Source of the DNA: Phaeosaccion multiseriatum
Lineage: Eukaryota > Protista > Ochrophyta, other classes
Assembly: GCA_965112735.1 (NCBI GenBank)
Contig: OZ218960.1
Location: 2,108,001 to 2,172,000, forward strand
DNA length: 64,000 bases
Direction: 5' to 3'
The position numbers and the translations under genes were made by a program. This document shows, piece after piece, positions 6,139-25,991 of the stretch. Each line of letters begins with the position of its first letter. The first letter of the stretch is position 1. Under the pieces are notes generated by a model. The model searched no databases. It was given only the letters and a program-made list of their open reading frames with translations, and was not told the DNA's origin.

Positions 6139-7025
6139 TTACTTTGTCTGGTCGCCACTTTCGACGAGCAGCTCCGGCGGCAAAGGCACTCTGTTCAAGC
6201 GGCGGTGGAACTCAGGGGGCGACATGCCTTCAACCTCGCAACACACGCCAACGAAGTTAACAGCAGCATCGCCTTCCACGCTTCGCAGTGCGCCCAAGTA
6301 GAGCTGCATCCAAAAGGGCGTGCCATTGGCTCTGTAGCTGACGAAGCACAGAGTTGTGTCCCTCGATGCGGCCACGTTGTTGTTAACTATGTCAATGCTA
6401 GTTTGAGTCGTGGACGGTCCACGCAGCAACATGCAGAGGTTTTGGCCCAGCACGCCCGCCTCCTCATGCCCAACAAGACTGAGAAATTTTTCACTCACGT
6501 ACAACAGAGTCAAGCTCGGATCTGTGAGAAAGAGCGCTTGCTGCGTCCTCGACAGAAGCTCCACCTGCTTCCTGTCATTTTCCATGAGCTGCAGTGCCGA
6601 TGGCACCCGTGATCCAATGTCGTCACTCCCCAAGCCCTGACCCGTGCGACTCACCCGCCCACGTGGTCGCGACCTCGGCAAAACGTCTTTCGCCGCCTTC
6701 TCACTGCCTGCAATCGTCTTTCGCTTCGCCTCCTCCAGCACTTGGTCGGCCTCATCGGGCAGGTGCCGCTTCACAATCGTAAGGAGGCGCATATTCTCCT
6801 TCCTCAACTTCAACAACTTCTCCTCCAAGCCCTCCAGCCGCTCCTTCTTTCGATTCCTCGACTTCTTTGCGTGCTCCCGATTTCGTGCTCGTTTGTAGCT
6901 CAGCTCACCACTATCCTCTCCGTCCTCCTCGTGGTCGTCGCTATCCTCGCCATGCCGGTGGTCCTCTTCCCGGGAAAGAGCAACTGACACCACATTTCTT
7001 CTCCTCCCTGTCCCTGCTGCCGCCC

Positions 7026-7060
<35 letters not shown>

Positions 7061-7464
7061 TCCTGCAGCTGCTCCTCCTCGGCCACGATGTCACTCTCAA
7101 GGTCGAGGCCCTTCACCTCCCGCCTTGCCTCGCGCTTGCGCAGAGTCATCCTGCTCGAAGATACTGTCGAAATCGCTGCTCCAAGAACGCTGGATTCGCC
7201 CCCCAGAGCAGCGTTTTCGAGCTGCTGCCCCGCCTTGGAAGGCGGCTTCTTCTCCAGAAAGGCCTCTGTAGTAGTCGCGGCGGTGGTAGTGGCAAAAGCA
7301 GCAGCAGCTGCAGCGAAGCTCGAGTCTAGCCCTTCCTTCTCAGGGAGGCAGCCGAAGGGGGGCTCCAAGAGAGACAGCGAGTCCTCATCGTCAAACGACC
7401 CGTCGAGCGACCCGGCGTTCCCCTCGAGGAAGCCCAGCCACGACACATTCCTCTTCATACACAT
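6139..7464 (-). CDS. Aureochrome-like bZIP-LOV(PAS) transcription factor with degenerate LOV domain
   Basis: bZIP KRARNREHAKKSRNRKKERLEGLEEKLLKLRKENMRL followed by LOV-like QQALFLTDPSL..VLGQNLCMLLRGPST..YRANGTPFWMQLYLGALR..NFVGV; start placed at first ATG (7464). Confidence 0.85.
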
Positions 7465-8620
7465 GGATGGTTGTTCAAGGCCCTGGAGCCAGGCGGTAGC
7501 TTGAGAAACAAACAAGTGGTCGAAAGAAAATCAAGAAAAAGAAAATGGCTCCCATCCACTGCCATCCCACGTCTGTGCTGGTCGTTCACAATCGTATTCG
7601 CAAAAAAAAAGAAGAGACCCTGACGCACTTAATCCTCGAGTGCGGATCGACAACAATGTTGGCGGCCGATAGCGCGCTATCGAGAATATGGCGAGGTGGC
7701 AGGCTGTCAGAAGCCAGCAGGGCAGCGGCGAGCTCCCCCCCCCCAAATATTTTTTTTCTCCCCCAGACCGTCTGGCCTGACGCCCGAACAGGGGGCTACG
7801 GCCCAGAAGCCAGGAGCCAGAGAAACCTAGTGCCCGGGGGGCCGATTACATGAGGGTGTCTCGCAGCCCAGAGCCCCCCCCCCCCCCCCCCCTAAAGTGC
7901 CTCTATCGTCGAGTTGAGCAGTTCTGGTACCCGAAGGAGGGGGGGGAAGGGGAGTGCAACAAGACCCTCAGAATATTTTGTTTGGATTAGTGGCACTGCG
8001 CTACGCGAATCGCCTTTTAGGTGTCTTGGAGGTGAGTGGGCTCTCTTACTGTCGCTTCTTCCTTCTTACAGCTCTAGCATCCATCTGCTACCTCGGGACG
8101 TGCCCGAAGCCTTATGACAACCTCGTTGGATGATTGTGGCCCGCGCCTGGGCCATTGGCATGGGCGAGGAGGGCACTGTCGGGTTGTGCTGGGAGAGCGG
8201 GGTGACGGCTCCCGTTGCCTCTGCTGAGGAGCTGGGCACAAAGGCCTGCGGCGTCGCTGCCCCTGCTGCTGATTGACCACCCTACCTTCAGTAAGACTGC
8301 CCTGAGCGCCTCGGGCAGTATGCACTCTGAACACTCCGCCCGACTTCTCGTCCTCTCTCAAGGATGGACTTCCTTCCGATGTGGCGGGGGTGAAAAGCAG
8401 CAGAGCCTTGTCGTTGAGAGCTCCAGTCGAGAGCTCCAGTAATCACACCATAACTGAGACCCTGCAAGTATCACATACAGCTCCGGGTCCGGGCATATGA
8501 TCGAATGGATTCGAAGCGAAGCGATACCAGCAAACCCCCCTTCAGCAGTGAGCGCAAGTCTGTCTCCCTAGAAGCAAGCCGATGAGTGGGCTGACTGCTC
8601 CCCTGCTTCACGCGTCAGGC

Positions 8621-18807: not shown

Positions 18808-18856
18808 CTAACGCCTTGGGGGGAGCTGCCCCCCGATGTTGTAGTTTTCCGGGACA

Positions 18857-18888
<32 letters not shown>

Positions 18889-18903
18889 ATGGGGCGGGAA
18901 CGC

Positions 18904-18942
<39 letters not shown>

Positions 18943-19001
18943 ATGCTGCTGCTGATTCACCGGAGGATATTGGGCTGGAGGCTGGCCGTGAAATCCCACA
19001 A

Positions 19002-19039
<38 letters not shown>

Positions 19040-20266
19040 GGCGGCGGTATATGTTGTTGGAGGGGGAGCTGTTGTTGTTGTGGTTGCTGCTGGGGCTGCT
19101 GTTGGGGATGATATTGGGGAGGCTGCGGATGTTGCTGCTGTAGTACTTGCTGCTGTGGTACGTGCTGCTGTGGTGCGTGCTGCTGTGGCACGTGCTGCTG
19201 CTGCTGCTGCTGTGGTGGTGGCTGGTACAAGTGCTGCTGCGGTGGACCACCAAACTGCGGCAGCTGACTCTGTCCCTGCTGTGGTGCTGCGAAGAGCGGC
19301 GTGTCTGGCGGGACTTGATGGTGCACCGCAGGCTGGCTGGCTGCACCAACAGGCTGACTAGCTGCCGATGATACCTGTTTCAGCCACGATGGTCAGCAGC
19401 AAAGAAGAGCAGCAGCAGTGTAAGTCCGCTGGTGAAGAAAGACCCAACAACAGTAGCAGCAATGAAAACACATACCTGATAGGACTTGATCATGTCTAAT
19501 CTCAGTAGCATTTGCATGAGGGCCTCCGTCACCTCCGGGTGAGCAACCATCATCTGTCTGGCCTGGTCCATGTCCGTCTCCGCAAATTCCTTCATATTGG
19601 CAACAATGTCGTAGATCTCGTGCATGTCCATGCCCATCACCACGGCCTTGACGGATCGCTGAGAGCCTTGCTGACCCGCCCCATCTGACGCCGAATTAGC
19701 CCCTCCACCGCCGGAGTTGCCGCTGTCCAAGGATATCTTTCCACTACTATTTGAGAAATTGACTCGAAGCTGCGCTAACACACACGGAGGCAGCAGCAGC
19801 GGGCGACTGAATCAGCGAAAGCATGCTCAAGGATGCCTCCCCTAACCTCTCCCCTAACCTGTCGGCCGTTGCACTCCTCGTTATTCAGGTTCCGAATGGC
19901 GCTCAGGACCGTCGCCTCGTCCTCATACTCCACAAAGCCGAAGCCTTTGGGCTTGTTCGTTTCGGGGTCCGTGACGAGCCTCACATTCACGACACGGCCC
20001 ACCTCTGAAAAGATCCTGTGGAGCTGCTCCTCGGTGGTACCGTAGGGGATGTTCCCCACTGATGAGTAGGTCGTCGGATGGGGTGGGGGGGGGGGAGAGG
20101 ACAAGTTGGTTACGGGATGCACAACAGTGGTGACAGGGGGGCAAGAGAGCACCTCGAGCACCCTTGACCACCCTCCTCACCTCCCTTGCGCACGACACTC
20201 ACCGAACACATCATTTTTACCGCTGCGAAGCCGACGCTGCTGCTGCTGCTGCTGCTGCTGTTGCAT
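18808..20266 (-). CDS. CSTF2: Cleavage stimulation factor 64 kDa (RRM + hinge), polyQ tail, 4 exons
   Basis: [56 protein letters not shown]; hinge [28 protein letters not shown]. Confidence 0.9.
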
Positions 20267-20444: not shown

Positions 20445-20710
20445 ATGCAGCGGCTTCCGTCAGAGGTGCTGTGTGATGATATCGATGAGGCTCAGGGAGG
20501 AGCACCAGGGCAATATCCTGACGGGTTGATGCATCAGCCACAGCCACAGCAACAGCAGCAGCATCAGGAGCAGCATGGACATCATCATGGGCAGCACGGG
20601 GTCCAGGGAGAAGCGGCTGGGTTTGAAGCGTTGATGCACCAGCCTAAGCCACGGCAGCCGCAGCAGCATCAGCACCAGCATCAGCAGCACCAGCACCAGC
20701 ACCAGCAAAA

Positions 20711-20743
<33 letters not shown>

Positions 20744-23700
20744 CCAGCACCAGCAGCACCAGCAGCAACTGCGACAGCATATGTTCACAGAGGCATTCTC
20801 AGAGGCACCAGTACATCACCAGCCCCCCCCGCCCCCTTCAAGCGGAAGGGCCGGTGCCAATGTTCCAGCGGGTAGCAGTAGCAAGAGCAAGCAGCAGCAA
20901 CAGCCACCGATACTGCAGCAGGAACAGCAGCTGACCGTATCGGACAGCTTTGTTAACAGGGTCGGAGAGCTCTTTGCTAGCGTGTGGAAGGTCCGTCCAG
21001 ATGTGGCCCTCCGAGACCGCTACGGAGATAAGAGAAAGGGAGCTCTCAGCGTGTTCTGGCAAGACTACAAGAAGGTACAGGCGTGGAGTATATAGCGTGC
21101 AACCAAACATCAATCCATCCATCAATGCAAGACATTAACCAACCCCGCCCCCTGTAGGTTCGCGTCGACTGGAGGGAGCTGGCAGGGGTCTCAGAAGATG
21201 TGTTCCAACTCAAGCTTGCACACTACATGCAAATCGACGGGCCTTCCAGGGATAACTCCGATAACAGGATCAAGTACATAGTTCGGGAGCGTATTAAGGA
21301 CAATACGCATTTGGGGGTGATGGACGGCAAGAACACAAAGGCTGCCAAGAGAAAGGCGGCGGCTGCTGCGGCGGCGGCTGCTCTGAAGAGTCCCCATGCC
21401 TTGCAGCCGGCGGTTCCCTTGGTGCGTGTCAAGACGGAGGAGGTTGGGTTGGATTCTGAGGAAGAAACGAGAACAAAGAAGCGGACTAGAGAGAGCATGC
21501 TTGCCGGCCCGGCGCGAGGGGCTGCAGCCGGCGCAGGTTCCTCGGCTGTCGCTGGTGATGCTCCAACCACCACACCTTCCGCGGCCAAAGGCCCTAAACA
21601 GAGGGGGCCTAACCATTGGTGGGAGAGAGACCTTACCCCTGAAGGCTGTGTGCTGCACCCCACTGCCAACTGTCACGAGTGGACAAGCGACAATGGGATT
21701 GAGCACCGTATCATGGAGGTGAGGCGGGTCACACGTTACGCTCGGCAAGAGGAAAAGAGTTTTGACACACAACACACGCACACCCTTTGTTCTGGCTCAG
21801 ATTGAGTTTCAGCACGGGTGCGAGATGAAGCCCCCGAAGGAGAGGCTCATTGAGAACTTTACGACCATGTGGAGGCCGAATTGCGACGTAGTGTACGTGC
21901 ACGGCTGTCAGGTGAGGAAGGAGTGCACTTTTGGCTGTAGGGCGACTGTTGATTTGGGTAAGGAGTGTTAGCCAATCTCGTGTGCGGTGCGTCTCTTGTT
22001 GAAAACAGCAAGAAGGCATGTACTTCGAACCCATCATGGGTATCTACGAGAAGCAAGTGTCCACCTTCCAAGGCAAATTTCTGTATCGACAGAGCTCCTT
22101 GGCGGGGAGAGAAGGGGTGACTTGGCTGTACTTCGACAAGGAGAGGAGCAAGTGGGTCATCTCAGAGAACTACCTGGCTCAACCTTCCAGCCCCCTCTTC
22201 GAGTACTCGCTCCCGCCGGTGCTTGAAAAGTTAGTAGTCAACCGCGCACGTAAGCGTCGAAAGTATGAGTCCGTGGTTTTCACCTCCTCCCCCCGCCTCC
22301 ACCCATCCAACAATAGGTTGGGGGTACCGGCTATGCAGATGGGTCAACCAACGAACTTGCCCCTGTTTGTCAAGAGCGGAACGACCCTGCTTCCGCCCAT
22401 GGAGATGTATTACCTGCACAACCTGGAGATCCGGCAAGTCTGCGACAGGGCATGGAGGGGATGCTTCAGAGCAAATCCTAGTGAGGTACTGTTTGAGGCC
22501 AAGGGTAGCCCCTAGATGGCCCCACACGCTTGCCCTAAACCTTCACGTCTTGTCTCCACTCGCCTGAGGAAGGTTGCCTTTGGGCTCTTTGCACGGCTGG
22601 CCTCTGCCCAGGAGAGCTTCGTGTCCCAGTCTCCGGCCGATCACTTTGCCGCAGAGGTGCGTTCGTCGTCTTTTGTCTGTGGCTTGTTACGGCTTACTCT
22701 TGGTTCTAAGCACTTTTGTCTTGGTTGACGGCTCCCCAAAGGCCTTCGATGCGGAGCGAGAGCAGATACTGGAGTTCTTCTTGGTCTTTCGAGATGAGAG
22801 TCCCGATGGGGATGCTGGCAAGGTGAGCTTCCTTTGTGGAAGGGGGCAGGACTTTGTTGCTTCCTTCTCTCCTCATCCCGTCCCTTGTTTTGCATCATGG
22901 ACAGGTTGTCCGACGGGAGGACTACTTGGCGTTCATGGAGTGGTTCGTGGGCACGCTGCCGAGCGTGTCCTTGCCCCTCAAGATTTGGCGCATGTACCAC
23001 GCGCTCAAGGAGGGAGGTGTGCCCTTCATTCCCATGGCCATGAGCAACAGCCAGAAGGACTTCAACAAGCACTTCCAGGTAGGGTCATGTGTGTGGGCCA
23101 AGGGCCGTCTACCATTCATGTACCAAGTACCGGGACTTGACGCACACACGCACACACACACTCACGTCTACAGCTACTGGAGAGCGTGCCCAACCTTGGC
23201 CGCTACTGCTTTCGCTTCTCGCGCCAGCCCCACCACGTGACAGTCGACTACACAGTGTCGAACGGATTCGAGGGGGGAAGGGCGACGGTCAAGGTGAAGT
23301 TGTCTTCTCATTCCTTTGAGGGGCTATCTCGGGGCGGCGAAGAACAACCAACCAACTCTTCGTATTTGCAATTGTACCCCGACTGCTGTTGCTGGACCGC
23401 AGGTGATGAGCCACCGAATCAAGATCAGTGACATGACTGTTTCTGGGGTAACTCTTCGCGTGGAGAACCTTATGCTGCGGTGGGAGGGACAAGGGGGGGG
23501 CGTTGGGCGGCAGAACACTCCGTCTCCATCACCGTCGGACCTCGATCAGCGCACCTTTCTGGACATGTTCCATAACCTCACGCCTGCCCTGGCGAGGCAG
23601 CAGGCGAAGGGGAGCCTCATGGACCACCGCCTCTTCAATGGAGGCGCCAACGGGCAGAATGCAACCCCTCTCAACTTGGACTACGTTGAGTACTCCTCCT

Positions 23701-23896
23701 TCGCCGAGCTCGAGGTCAGTGCCCCGTGTGACCGTGTGCATCCCTATCTGTTACTTGGGGCCTCTACTAACCCCCCTCGCTCCCCCTCTATTTGCCGCAG
23801 ATGTTCTTCTCCCGCACACTCGTCGAGAAGTGTGACACGAGCAAGTCCCCAGGCACAGTCGAGCTGGAGCCTACGTATCTGGGAACCATATACTAA
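20445..23896 (+). CDS. Large multi-exon protein: polyQ/H N-terminus, putative winged-helix region, basic NLS-like tracts, C-terminal linker-SH2-like module
   Basis: Ten exons joined in frame by GT-AG introns (donors 21075, 21719, 21912, 22486, ~22656, ~22823, 23079, 23294, 23715); C-terminus has LAFMEWF, LLESVPNLGRYCFRFS, HVTVDY, VMSHRI, YSSFAELEMFFS. Confidence 0.7.
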
Positions 23897-24117: not shown

Positions 24118-24956
24118 ATGGCGGAGCATGACGATGACGCGCACGTTCAGAATATGAGTCGGCAGCTGAGCGCGTTCTGGGAGGAGCAGGGCGTCGAGGT
24201 ACGGATCCGCTCGATGCTGCTATTTTAATCCCGTAGGCCGGAGAGCGGCGGCTGGCCTGTACTTGGGCTCTTCCAGGGTGGGGAGGGGGGTTTTCTCTGC
24301 CTGAGCGTCGCGCGCACTACAGCAGAGCCCAATTCAACATTTCCCGCTGCTACTGCTGCTACCCCGTGTATATCTCCTTGCTGTCGCCCCCCTCTCCCGT
24401 CCTCCCGCCCCTCCCCTCAAGGTGGACGAACTAGAGACAGGCACCGAGCAGGACTTTAAGAATCACAACGACCTCCCGCTGGCAAGAATCAAGCGTATTA
24501 TGAAGAGCGACGAAGACGTCCGAATGATTAGCGCTGAGGCGCCTGTGCTATTCGCAAAGGTGAGATAGGCAGACAGCCGAGATTGAAGGTTGGTGGGGAA
24601 GAAGGATGGAAGGGAGAGTAGCCAGGACTGTCGCATCGAAACTCGTTGGCTTTTCGACTGGGCCTAACTTGTGCCCCGAGTGTAGAACGAGTGTGATGGA
24701 GTGATTTTGTGGGAGGTTTTGTGTTGTGTTATAAGGCTGTTTTTTGGTTACGTTTTATTATAGCCTGCCTGCTGGCTGCCTGCCCTTTTGAACCCCCCCC
24801 CTTATGCAGGCTTGTGAGATGTTCATTTTGGAGCTAACATTACGGAGCTGGTGCTTCAGCGAGAAGAACAAACGGAGGACCCTTCAGAAGGAGGACATTC
24901 AAACAGCAATTGCAAAGACCGACATTTTCGACTTCCTGGTGCAGGTCATTAAATAA
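24118..24956 (+). CDS. NFYC: Nuclear factor Y subunit C (histone fold), 3 exons
   Basis: [68 protein letters not shown]; not captured by the supplied ORF track. Confidence 0.96.
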
Positions 24957-25025: not shown

Positions 25026-25991
25026 CTAGACTCGATTGATGTGTGGGAGCACGCAACTCGTCATGTCGAGCTCGCTCAGATCTGTGGCCTGCATATGAGC
25101 TCCTACTCCAACCAGTGCCTGCTTCAACGCGTCCTTGCTGCCTGCAAACACCATCTTGTCCTTAACCTTGGCTGTGTCAGGGGCCCATGCCACAAACAAT
25201 AGCTTGTCCGTAGGGCGTCCGTCGGGAGTAGTGTACTCCAGGTCGAAGAGGCCGTACCGGCACTCGTTTGGCGGCAGTGCTGCACAAAAGTCATCCCATG
25301 TCATGGCCTTCTCCCCGACCTGATCGATCACAATCTCATCGTCCGCCACCTGATGAATGGGCATTGAGGTGTGTGTGGGGGGGGGAGGGCGGCGGGCAAG
25401 GGGGAGCAGAAGAACACGGCAGCGTTAGAGAACGTGCACAGCGATTGGTGCCACCCTAGAACATGTCTTGCCTTGTATACGTAGAAGCGGTTGTTGTGAG
25501 GCTCTTTGTGAAGCTTAAAGTCGTTGAACTCCGTGATAATTTGGTCGTTCACAGCGATTCCGGTGGCCTGTCCGGGGACGGCGGGAACAACAAGCGAAAA
25601 CAGCGGGGCAGGTTATTGGGGGATACCGCAAAAGCAGCCGTGCCCCTGGGCCGCGGGGAGGAGCACCATGCCTAGGCAAGAGCAGAGTGTGGAGCTGGGA
25701 CTCCCGAGCGTCCGCCGCCGCAGCAGCGGACCTTTGCTCCAAGAAGGGTCCAGGAACAACGGCGCAGGGGACTTGACATCTTGTCGCCGTCCTACCCTTG
25801 GCTGCCATGCACTCGCCGCCGCGCGCAGGAATAATAAGCCCGGGAGGAGGACGACGCACATGCCGAGTAGCGGCGGCAGGGCGACAGCAGGCCGCAGCAG
25901 CCAGGCAGGACCGGGAGCGGGGCCCGAACTCACTGAAATTACAGGATCCGCCTTGACTTCCCTTGTACAGCACGTCTTTTCCACGTACCAT
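25026..25991 (-). CDS. Actin-depolymerizing factor/cofilin; ATG-only first exon, second intron GC-AG
   Basis: M/ATGIAVNDQIITEFNDFKL..RFYVYK/VADDEIVI..CRYGLFDLEY..KLLFVAWAPDTAKVKDKMVFAGSKDALK..QATDLSEL. Confidence 0.93.

What the first reader, a model, noticed from the sequence alone, without database searches (positions are those of the whole stretch)
22905..23896. Hidden STAT/SHK-type linker-SH2 module in an ochrophyte protein, visible only after splicing
Seen: exons 22905-23078, 23174-23293, 23403-23714 and 23801-23896 splice in frame (GT-AG) to VVRREDYLAFMEWFVGTL..LKIWRMYHALKEGGVPF..LLESVPNLGRYCFRFSRQPHHVTVDY..VKVMSHRIKI..(insert)..YSSFAELEMFFSR..LEPTYL. Established: SH2 domains have betaB G-x-F/Y-x-x-R-x-S with the phosphotyrosine-binding Arg (here the CGC codon at 23213), a hydrophobic betaC ending in an aromatic, betaD V-x-H-x-x-I and alphaB F-x-S-L-x-E-L. 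STATs and Dictyostelium SHK proteins precede the SH2 with an EF-hand-like linker containing F..WF. All these elements appear here in the right order. Inference: a phosphotyrosine-reading module in a photosynthetic stramenopile, where SH2 signalling is poorly described. The ORF track splits it over several entries, so it is easy to miss.
Basis: partly seen in the sequence, partly recalled or inferred. Interest (0 to 1): 0.9.

Follow-up and report, generated by a model that had tools for sequence, protein, structure and literature searches.

The report
Unproven SH2-like domain, algal orphan gene
The exons and the conserved arginine motif are real and belong to an 11-exon gene found only in a few related algae, but no test I could run shows that its C-terminal domain is a phosphotyrosine-reading SH2 domain, so that reading stays open.

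Summary
The four exons splice in frame with GT-AG borders. They end an 11-exon, 852-aa gene (20445-23896, + strand) with strong third-codon GC bias. Orthologue fragments from eight public assemblies confirm four of its ten junctions.

The motif G-R-Y-C-F-R-F-S is at the stated place, with the Arg codon CGC at 23213. In the one orthologue that covers it, 16 residues around the Arg are identical.

The SH2 reading could be neither confirmed nor refuted.
- Pfam finds nothing on any exon, on the orthologue piece, or on a 66-aa junction-spanning core, yet it does find domains on neighbouring single exons.
- Sequence and profile searches of the PDB find no SH2 or STAT.
- Comparison with human STAT segments is marginal (about 4-5% of shuffles score as well in two tests, 22% in the third).
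The strands are long, and five fold searches return no SH2.

The spliced domain has no reference, so it could not be folded whole.

My odds: divergent STAT-like linker plus SH2-like module 0.35, NTF2/cystatin-like roll 0.25, unrelated alpha+beta domain 0.35.

The scan noted STAT-type SH2 modules before, on other DNA of this genome.

The parts
20445..21074 (+). Exon 1: first ATG of the ORF and a Gln/His-rich N-terminus. Its end starts a conserved-looking block (..FWQDYKK).
   Evidence: GC1 0.77, GC3 0.65. Donor AAG|gtacag.
21158..21718 (+). Exon 2: charged region with poly-Ala and two basic clusters (K-N-T-K-A-A-K-R-K at residue 268, R-T-K-K-R-T-R-E at 315) that look like nuclear localisation signals, then a Cys/His-rich stretch.
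   Evidence: No Pfam family. The NLS reading is inference.
21801..22485 (+). Exons 3-5 (21801-21911, 22009-22229, 22317-22485): conserved middle domain of unknown family.
   Evidence: Orthologue pieces L006:440-610 (E 5e-15), L005:567-734 and L005:1377-1520 (E 5e-12) run across junctions 21911|22009 and 22229|22317. Pfam gives only a chance-level hit.
22573..22822 (+). Exons 6-7 (22573-22656, 22742-22822): first long helix of the helical region. The degenerate EF-loop-like D-G-D-A-G-K stretch is not conserved in the orthologues.
   Evidence: These exons are fused with exon 8a in L001, L005 and L006. AF2 helix 11-33 on the orthologue piece.
22905..23078 (+). Exon A of the finding: the most conserved helix (Y-L-A-F-M-E-W-F-V), I-W-R-M-Y, a short hydrophobic strand-like stretch, and the start of the helix read as alphaA.
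   Evidence: 20 of 26 residues identical to L005 in the first helix. Invariant across 9 sequences. AF2 helix 46-63. The orthologues have an extra intron after L-P-V-K.
23174..23293 (+). Exon B: end of the helix, then G-R-Y-C-F-R-F-S (Arg R691, codon 23213-23215), the turn R-Q-P-H, and the strand H-V-T-V-D-Y-T-V.
   Evidence: 19 of 24 identical; F-R-F-S-R-Q-P-H-H-V-T-V-D-Y-T-V is unchanged in L005. AF2 strands 23-32 and 35-48 with pLDDT 80-90.
23403..23714 (+). Exon C: third long strand (V-M-S-H-R-I-K-I-S-D), probably a fourth (V-T-L-R-V-E-N-L-M-L-R-W), a Gly/Pro/Ser-rich stretch, a helix-like stretch, then Y-S-S-F-A-E-L-E.
   Evidence: Only the first 15 residues are covered by the orthologue, where they are contiguous with exon B. 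AF2 strand 51-65. GC3 0.75 over the exon. No homologue found for the rest.
23801..23896 (+). Exon D: C-terminal 31 residues with Tyr 847 and Tyr 852, then stop TAA.
   Evidence: No orthologue sequence was obtained, so its conservation is unknown.

Best explanation
The window carries a real 11-exon gene for an 852-aa protein. It has a Gln-rich N-terminus, basic NLS-like clusters, a conserved middle domain of unknown family, and a conserved C-terminal alpha+beta module (residues about 560-745 plus a tail).

The module would be a very divergent relative of the STAT-type helical linker plus SH2 domain. The helix F-M-E-W-F would pack on the domain. The strand-turn-strand Y-C-F-R-F-S-R-Q-P-H-H-V-T-V-D-Y would present Arg691, Ser693 and the two His as a pocket for a phosphorylated (or otherwise anionic) ligand. 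The protein would then be a nuclear adaptor or transcription regulator recruited, or dimerised through its C-terminal tyrosines, by phosphorylation.

Shown: the gene model, the conservation, and the helix-strand-strand-strand order. Inferred: the fold, the pocket, any ligand, and the nuclear role.
For: - The gene model is sound: GT-AG at all ten introns, GC3 0.63-0.90 in every exon, and introns of 82-109 nt.
- Orthologue fragments confirm four junctions directly and share the architecture from the middle domain to the third strand.
- The motif G-x-[YF]-x-F-R-F-S is followed by an alternating h-T-h-x-Y strand, and both are unchanged in L005 while flanking parts are 39-40% identical.
- AF2 on the junction-spanning 66 residues gives H5-17, E23-32, E35-48 and E51-65, with pLDDT 80-90 on the strands. 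This is the order the SH2 reading predicts.
- The upstream region is helical.
- Earlier notes of this scan report STAT-type linker-SH2 modules in other genes of the same genome. I did not check them.
Against: - No Pfam SH2, STAT or Cbl family appears on any exon, on the orthologue piece that joins the three strands, or on the 66-aa core, even at E<=10. The same tool finds histone-fold, cofilin, RRM and CSTF2-hinge domains on single neighbouring exons.
- PDB sequence and profile searches return only chance hits.
- Smith-Waterman against STAT5B/STAT6 gives P about 0.05. A four-STAT HMM scores -0.8 bits, matched by 22% of shuffles.
- The partial AF2 model has strands of 10-15 residues and two-residue turns, longer and tighter than I recall for SH2 domains.
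- None of five fold searches lists an SH2. The neighbours are cystatin/affimer, PAS halves, NAC and TFIIA, all weak.
- The proposed alphaB lies about 90 residues after the proposed betaD.
- The betaD His is Tyr in the orthologue.
Confidence: 0.35

Rival explanations
1. The module is an NTF2-like or cystatin-like alpha+beta roll. Two or three N-terminal helices would pack into a curved sheet of four or five long antiparallel strands. This is a ligand-binding or oligomerisation domain with no link to phosphotyrosine. The Arg motif would be a conserved strand of that sheet.
For: - The element order helix, helix(+short helix), short strand, helix, then three to four long strands is also the NTF2 order as I recall it. 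It is read here plus the sequence.
- The strands are 10-15 residues long.
- The only Pfam family that appears at all is SnoaL. It hits four orthologue helical pieces in the right register (profile positions 6-63 of 126) at E 0.03-0.13.
- The weak structural neighbours include cystatins, the CaMKII association domain and a ketosteroid-isomerase-like protein.
Against: - The SnoaL scores are 12.5-14.6 bits against a threshold of 28.4. They come from closely related sequences and are absent for the window's own version.
- The PDB profile search with the helical alignment finds no NTF2-like chain.
Confidence: 0.25
2. The module is a lineage-restricted alpha+beta domain unrelated to any described family. 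Its resemblance to SH2 (and to SnoaL) is a chance match of short motifs picked out by eye.
For: - Every family-level test is at chance level.
- The protein atlas gives no recognisable family for the strand pieces.
- Relatives are found only as nine short fragments in Logan and ENA assemblies, and none in two scans of JGI metagenomes.
- A loose betaB pattern is expected about once per window by chance.
Against: The secondary structure agrees with a prediction made beforehand from the SH2 reading. The colinear alignment to STAT segments is somewhat better than most shuffles. An absence of hits from short pieces is weak evidence.
Confidence: 0.35
3. The region is the C-terminal half of a degenerate class I SAM-dependent methyltransferase fold (beta4, helix, L-K-x-G-G, beta5, helix, beta6-beta7 hairpin).
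For: - The atlas features of exon A point only to methyltransferase clusters, with score 0.81.
- The exon B profile's best PDB hit is glycine N-methyltransferase at E 1.7.
- Several methyltransferase C-terminal sheets appear among the weak structural neighbours.
Against: - No G-x-G-x-G motif or N-terminal half is visible anywhere upstream in the sequence.
- L-K-E-G-G is L-H-D-D-D or L-R-D-D-N in the orthologues.
- AF2 makes the supposed beta4 a helix.
- Pfam finds no methyltransferase family on exon A.
- An atlas score of 0.81 is reached by a third of shuffled proteins.
Confidence: 0.04

Closest known systems
STAT linker-SH2 module (human STAT1/3/5/6; Dictyostelium STATa, PDB 1uur)
   Same: - A helical region with an F-x-x-W-[FL] helix sits directly before a helix-strand-strand-strand unit.
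- The first strand reads G-x-[FY]-x-x-R-F-S and the second reads h-T-h-x-[WY].
- The C-terminal tail contains tyrosines.
- An N-terminus that looks like a transcription regulator's fits the STAT idea.
   Different: - No significant sequence or profile similarity.
- Not found by Pfam or PDB searches.
- The turn after R-F-S is shorter.
- The strands in the partial model are longer.
- About 90 residues separate the third strand from the proposed alphaB.
- No STAT coiled-coil or DNA-binding domain was detected.
Plant STAT-like (STATL / SHA, SHB) proto-SH2 proteins (Gao et al. 2004; Williams and Zvelebil 2004, as cited in PMC8331091 and PMC3670131)
   Same: These are non-animal proteins with a proposed linker-SH2 module whose phosphotyrosine binding is unproven. 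They are the nearest precedent for an SH2 outside animals and amoebae.
   Different: According to PMC8331091 those domains are recognised as SH2 homologues, whereas this one is not recognised by any profile I could run.
SnoaL / NTF2-like fold (Pfam PF07366 and clan)
   Same: Sub-threshold SnoaL hits fall on the helical part of four orthologues in the correct register. Helices are followed by several long antiparallel strands.
   Different: Scores are far below the curated threshold, the window's own sequence gives no hit, and there is no PDB match.
Other STAT-type SH2 genes noted in this genome (CHAT-STAND-SH2, GTPase-SH2; notes s1-352608, s1-352599, s1-331474)
   Same: They are in the same genome and carry the same proposed module type.
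   Different: According to the notes, follow-up agents accepted the SH2 module in the two CHAT-STAND genes. The present gene fails every family-level test I could run, so it is at best a far outlier of that set. I could not read those sequences.

Membership tests
SH2 domain | Recognised by an SH2 sequence profile (Pfam PF00017 or the related SH2_2 and Cbl_N3 models) | tested here: not met
   There are 0 families at E<=10 for each exon, for L005:4506-4676, which joins the three strands, and for the 66-aa junction-spanning core. Positive control on neighbouring exons.
SH2 domain | betaB motif G-x-[FY]-x-x-R-x-S with a conserved Arg at betaB5 | tested here: met
   G-R-Y-C-F-R-F-S at residues 686-693, with the Arg codon at 23213. 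It reads G-R-F-S-F-R-F-S in L005, with the following 11 residues identical. Only one orthologue covers it.
SH2 domain | Secondary-structure order alphaA, betaB, betaC, betaD | tested here: met
   AF2 on the 66-aa core gives H5-17, E23-32, E35-48 and E51-65, with mean pLDDT 76. The same order occurs in other folds.
SH2 domain | Three-dimensional fold: central antiparallel sheet flanked by alphaA and alphaB | tested here: inconclusive
   Only a partial model without alphaB could be made. No SH2 appears among the listed matches in PDB Foldseek, two VIA runs, AFDB clusters or Swiss-Prot. All matches are weak, so this is neither confirmation nor exclusion.
SH2 domain | alphaB helix shortly after betaD-betaF | tested here: inconclusive
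   The proposed alphaB (Y-S-S-F-A-E-L-E) lies about 90 residues after the third strand. Another helix-like stretch lies in between. No orthologue or model covers this part.
SH2 domain | Binds phosphotyrosine peptides through the betaB Arg | not testable with these tools
   This needs the expressed domain and peptide binding assays.
STAT-type linker-SH2 | Significant similarity to the STAT linker-SH2 region | tested here: not met
   Smith-Waterman against PDB-checked STAT5B/STAT6 segments gives P about 0.05. A four-STAT HMM scores -0.8 bits, and 22% of shuffles do as well. hhalign scores 15.1, and 4% of shuffles do as well. No STAT appears in the PDB profile searches.
STAT-type linker-SH2 | Helical linker with a conserved F-x-x-W-[FL] helix directly N-terminal of the SH2 | tested here: met
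   F-M-E-W-F is invariant in 9 sequences. AF2 gives helices 11-33 and 46-63 with pLDDT 66. The Foldseek search of that piece was uninformative.
SnoaL / NTF2-like | Pfam SnoaL-clan profile at or above the curated threshold | tested here: not met
   12.5-14.6 bits against a cut-off of 28.4 on four related orthologue pieces. Nothing on the window's own exon A or on the 66-aa junction piece.
Class I SAM-dependent methyltransferase | G-x-G-x-G SAM-binding motif and an N-terminal Rossmann half | tested here: not met
   No such motif is visible in the 852-aa model. The supposed beta4 is helical in AF2. Pfam finds no methyltransferase family.

The most novel reading that the evidence does not exclude
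An ochrophyte alga has a STAT-analogous regulator built independently of animal and amoebal STATs. It would combine a Gln-rich, NLS-bearing N-terminus, a lineage-specific middle domain, and a linker-SH2 module so divergent that no current profile sees it. It would end in tyrosines that could mediate reciprocal SH2-phosphotyrosine dimerisation.
Probability: 0.25. Interest if true: 0.75.

Novelty: new variant of a known kind. Interest (0 to 1): 0.4.

Why it matters
Phosphotyrosine readers outside animals and amoebae are few and disputed. For plants the question is still open (PMC8331091).

If this module is an SH2, photosynthetic stramenopiles would have a STAT-like nuclear factor, and SH2 domains could hide below the reach of current profiles. 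That would widen the known spread of phosphotyrosine signalling.

If it is not, the gene is still a well-conserved, lineage-restricted protein with two domains of unknown family. The case also shows that a betaB-like motif alone is not enough to call an SH2.

Tried and rejected
- **Finding the full-length protein or annotated relatives.** phmmer of exon A against 1.84 billion representatives gave only four orthologue fragments plus two junk repeat proteins. The word-index search found nothing for exon C or for exon B with read-through. It found eight fragments, two already known, when queried with P0005. Two scans of JGI metagenomes confirmed no relative.
- **Protein atlas on exons A and B and the L005 piece.** No usable family. 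The methyltransferase lead from exon A is rejected for the reasons given under the rivals.
- **Local profile libraries.** The script machine holds none.
- **First alignment (A1).** It read through an intron by my mistake and was discarded.
- **Alignment A3.** A short piece was misaligned, so it was not used.
- **Foldseek on the 69-aa helical model.** Uninformative.
- **Paper searches.** I found no description of SH2 domains in stramenopile algae, and no paper naming the sequencing runs that hold the orthologues.
- **Left out.** Only two separate 66-aa junction-spanning peptides were typed.
Full report
**1. What is in the sequence**

Each is preceded by AG and followed by GT, and the last ends at TAA 23894-23896. 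Joined, they give a 233-residue open reading frame with the quoted peptides. The Arg of F-R-F-S is the CGC codon at 23213-23215. A mechanical ORF list does cut the region into several entries.

Reading upstream gave a complete model on the + strand. The exons are:
- 20445-21074
- 21158-21718
- 21801-21911
- 22009-22229
- 22317-22485
- 22573-22656
- 22742-22822

The product is 852 residues. All ten introns are GT-AG and 82-109 nt long, and nine of the ten are in phase 0. Every exon has GC3 of 0.63-0.90, well above its GC2, in the proposed frame.

The neighbours are ordinary eukaryotic genes. They are a CstF-64-like gene on the minus strand, a histone-fold NF-Y/NC2-type gene and a cofilin gene. 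The same window holds a bZIP-plus-PAS ORF of the aureochrome type.

**2. Relatives**

The window's own protein is not in the searchable collections. phmmer of exon A against 1.84 billion representatives found only four real hits. All are short ORF fragments with the motif Y-L-A-F-M-E-W-F-V-Y-T-L-P. A further search added six more fragments.

I fetched eight contigs (L001-L008) and mapped the model onto them with tblastn.
- They come from Logan and ENA assemblies, have 45-62% GC, and carry much longer introns.
- They share the architecture from the middle domain onward.
- In L001, L005 and L006, exons 6, 7 and the first half of exon A are one exon. This confirms junctions 22656|22742 and 22822|22905.
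- L006 and L005 run across 21911|22009 and 22229|22317.
- The orthologues have an intron after L-P-V-K that the window lacks.

The key piece is L005:4512-4673. It holds the counterpart of exon B joined directly to the first 15 residues of exon C (E 1e-12). This confirms the B|C junction. It also shows that F-R-F-S-R-Q-P-H-H-V-T-V-D-Y-T-V is unchanged, while the parts on either side are only 39-40% identical.

The His of the supposed betaD is Tyr in L005. Nothing was found for the rest of exon C or for exon D, and two metagenome scans were blank.

**3. Tests of the SH2 reading by sequence**

Pfam finds no family at E<=10 on any exon, on the L005 piece that joins the three strands, or on a 66-residue peptide typed across the two junctions from the proposed alphaA to betaD. 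The tool is not blind to exon-sized pieces. It finds the histone fold on 48- and 50-residue exons, and finds cofilin, RRM and the CSTF2 hinge next door.

phmmer and profile searches of all PDB sequences give nothing or chance hits. The chance hits are glycine N-methyltransferase at E 1.7, TilS and serum amyloid A. There is never an SH2 or a STAT.

That output also gave me a STAT6 segment. STAT1 and STAT3 segments came from memory only.
- Smith-Waterman of the spliced protein against STAT5B/STAT6 gives P about 0.05 for the C-terminal region. For STAT5B, the best hit in the whole protein lies elsewhere.
- A four-STAT HMM scores -0.8 bits, and 22% of shuffles do as well.
Its score is 15.1 against 10.4 +/- 2.2 for column shuffles, and 4% of shuffles are as good.

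This is a lead, not a demonstration. A loose betaB pattern alone is expected about 0.7 times in the six-frame translation of the window by my estimate, and it occurs three times.

**4. Tests by structure**

The whole spliced domain has no reference, so I could only fold pieces.

The 69-residue orthologue piece for exons 6-8a, with 13 further rows, folds as two helices (11-33 and 46-63; pLDDT 66). Foldseek says nothing useful about it.

The 66-residue junction-spanning core of the window, aligned with four orthologue pieces, gave mean pLDDT 76, with 80-90 on the strands. Its elements are helix 5-17 and strands 23-32, 35-48 and 51-65. That is a correct prediction of the SH2 reading.

However, the strands are 10-15 residues long and joined by two-residue turns, and the same order occurs in other folds.

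Five fold searches of this model list no SH2 (PDB Foldseek, VIA wide, VIA second look, AFDB clusters, Swiss-Prot).
- The neighbours are cystatins and affimers, C-terminal halves of PAS domains, NAC, TFIIA, a few NTF2-like proteins and some methyltransferase C-terminal sheets.
- A partial model with an uncertain helix position cannot settle the fold either way.

**5. Rivals**

The only Pfam family that appears anywhere in the module is SnoaL. It hits four orthologue helical pieces at 12.5-14.6 bits (E 0.03-0.13), in the right register for the helical first half of that fold. The window's own version gives nothing.

The element order is helix, helix, short strand-like stretch, helix, then three or four long strands. 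As I recall it, this fits an NTF2-like roll as well as it fits a STAT linker plus SH2. The long strands and the cystatin/NTF2-type neighbours lean that way.

A methyltransferase lead came from atlas features of exon A, the GNMT hit and some structural neighbours. I reject it for three reasons:
- There is no G-x-G-x-G motif and no N-terminal half.
- L-K-E-G-G is not conserved in the orthologues.
- AF2 makes the supposed beta4 a helix.

**6. Verdict**

The betaD and alphaB motifs are looser than stated, and the motif set is only marginally better than chance.

The interpretation cannot be decided with the tools as they stand. I put a very divergent STAT-like linker plus SH2-like module at 0.35, an NTF2/cystatin-like roll at 0.25, an unrelated alpha+beta domain at 0.35 and a methyltransferase remnant at 0.04.

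The conserved polar face (Arg687, Cys689, Arg691 and Ser693, with His696/697, Thr699 and Asp701 on the next strand) is my inference from the strand pattern. It would suit an anionic ligand under any of these folds.

Earlier notes of this scan report STAT-type SH2 modules in other genes of this genome. I could not read those sequences. The present gene fails the family-level tests that a typical member should pass, so it would be an outlier of that set at best.

The decisive step is a fold prediction and profile-profile search of the whole spliced C-terminus, followed by binding tests with an Arg691 mutant.

Noticed in passing
window 6142-7515 (-): A single 458-aa ORF with a bZIP domain followed by a C-terminal PAS/LOV-type domain, which is the aureochrome architecture. 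The usual N-C-R-F-L motif reads N-L-C-M-L-L here. It supports an ochrophyte origin.
   Followed up: partly
window 21075-23800: Nine of the ten introns of this gene are in phase 0 and all are 82-109 nt long. The orthologue contigs have introns of 400-1100 nt at partly different positions: an extra one after L-P-V-K and one after I-S-D-I-D-I-R, and none at the window's B|C, 6|7 and 7|8 junctions. This shows intron gain and loss within the family.
   Followed up: partly
window 22230-22316: This 87-nt intron has no in-frame stop, so ORF 22018-22515 reads straight through it. The orthologues L005 and L006 lack the 29 extra residues, so it is an intron and not coding.
   Followed up: yes
window 21801-22485; L006:440-610; L005:567-734: A conserved middle domain (K-P-P-K-[ED]-R-L-I, G-[IM]-Y-E-K-Q, K-F-L-Y-R-Q, W-L-[YF]-x-D ... 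W-x-I-S) with no Pfam or PDB family. This is a second unknown domain in the same protein.
   Followed up: partly
window 19380-20161 (-): A divergently transcribed neighbour with an RRM and a CSTF2 hinge domain (CstF-64-like), followed upstream by a very long poly-Gln tract (18808-19326).
   Followed up: partly
window 24119-24956 (+): A three-exon histone-fold gene of the NF-YC / NC2-alpha type, starting about 220 nt after the stop codon of the gene studied.
   Followed up: partly
window 25026-25552 (-): A cofilin/ADF gene (Pfam E 7e-29 on one exon).
   Followed up: partly
P0001, P0002: The two top hits of the representative search are long proteins made of shuffled short repeats. They matched exon A in 7-11 stretches and look like translated repetitive DNA, not relatives.
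   Followed up: no
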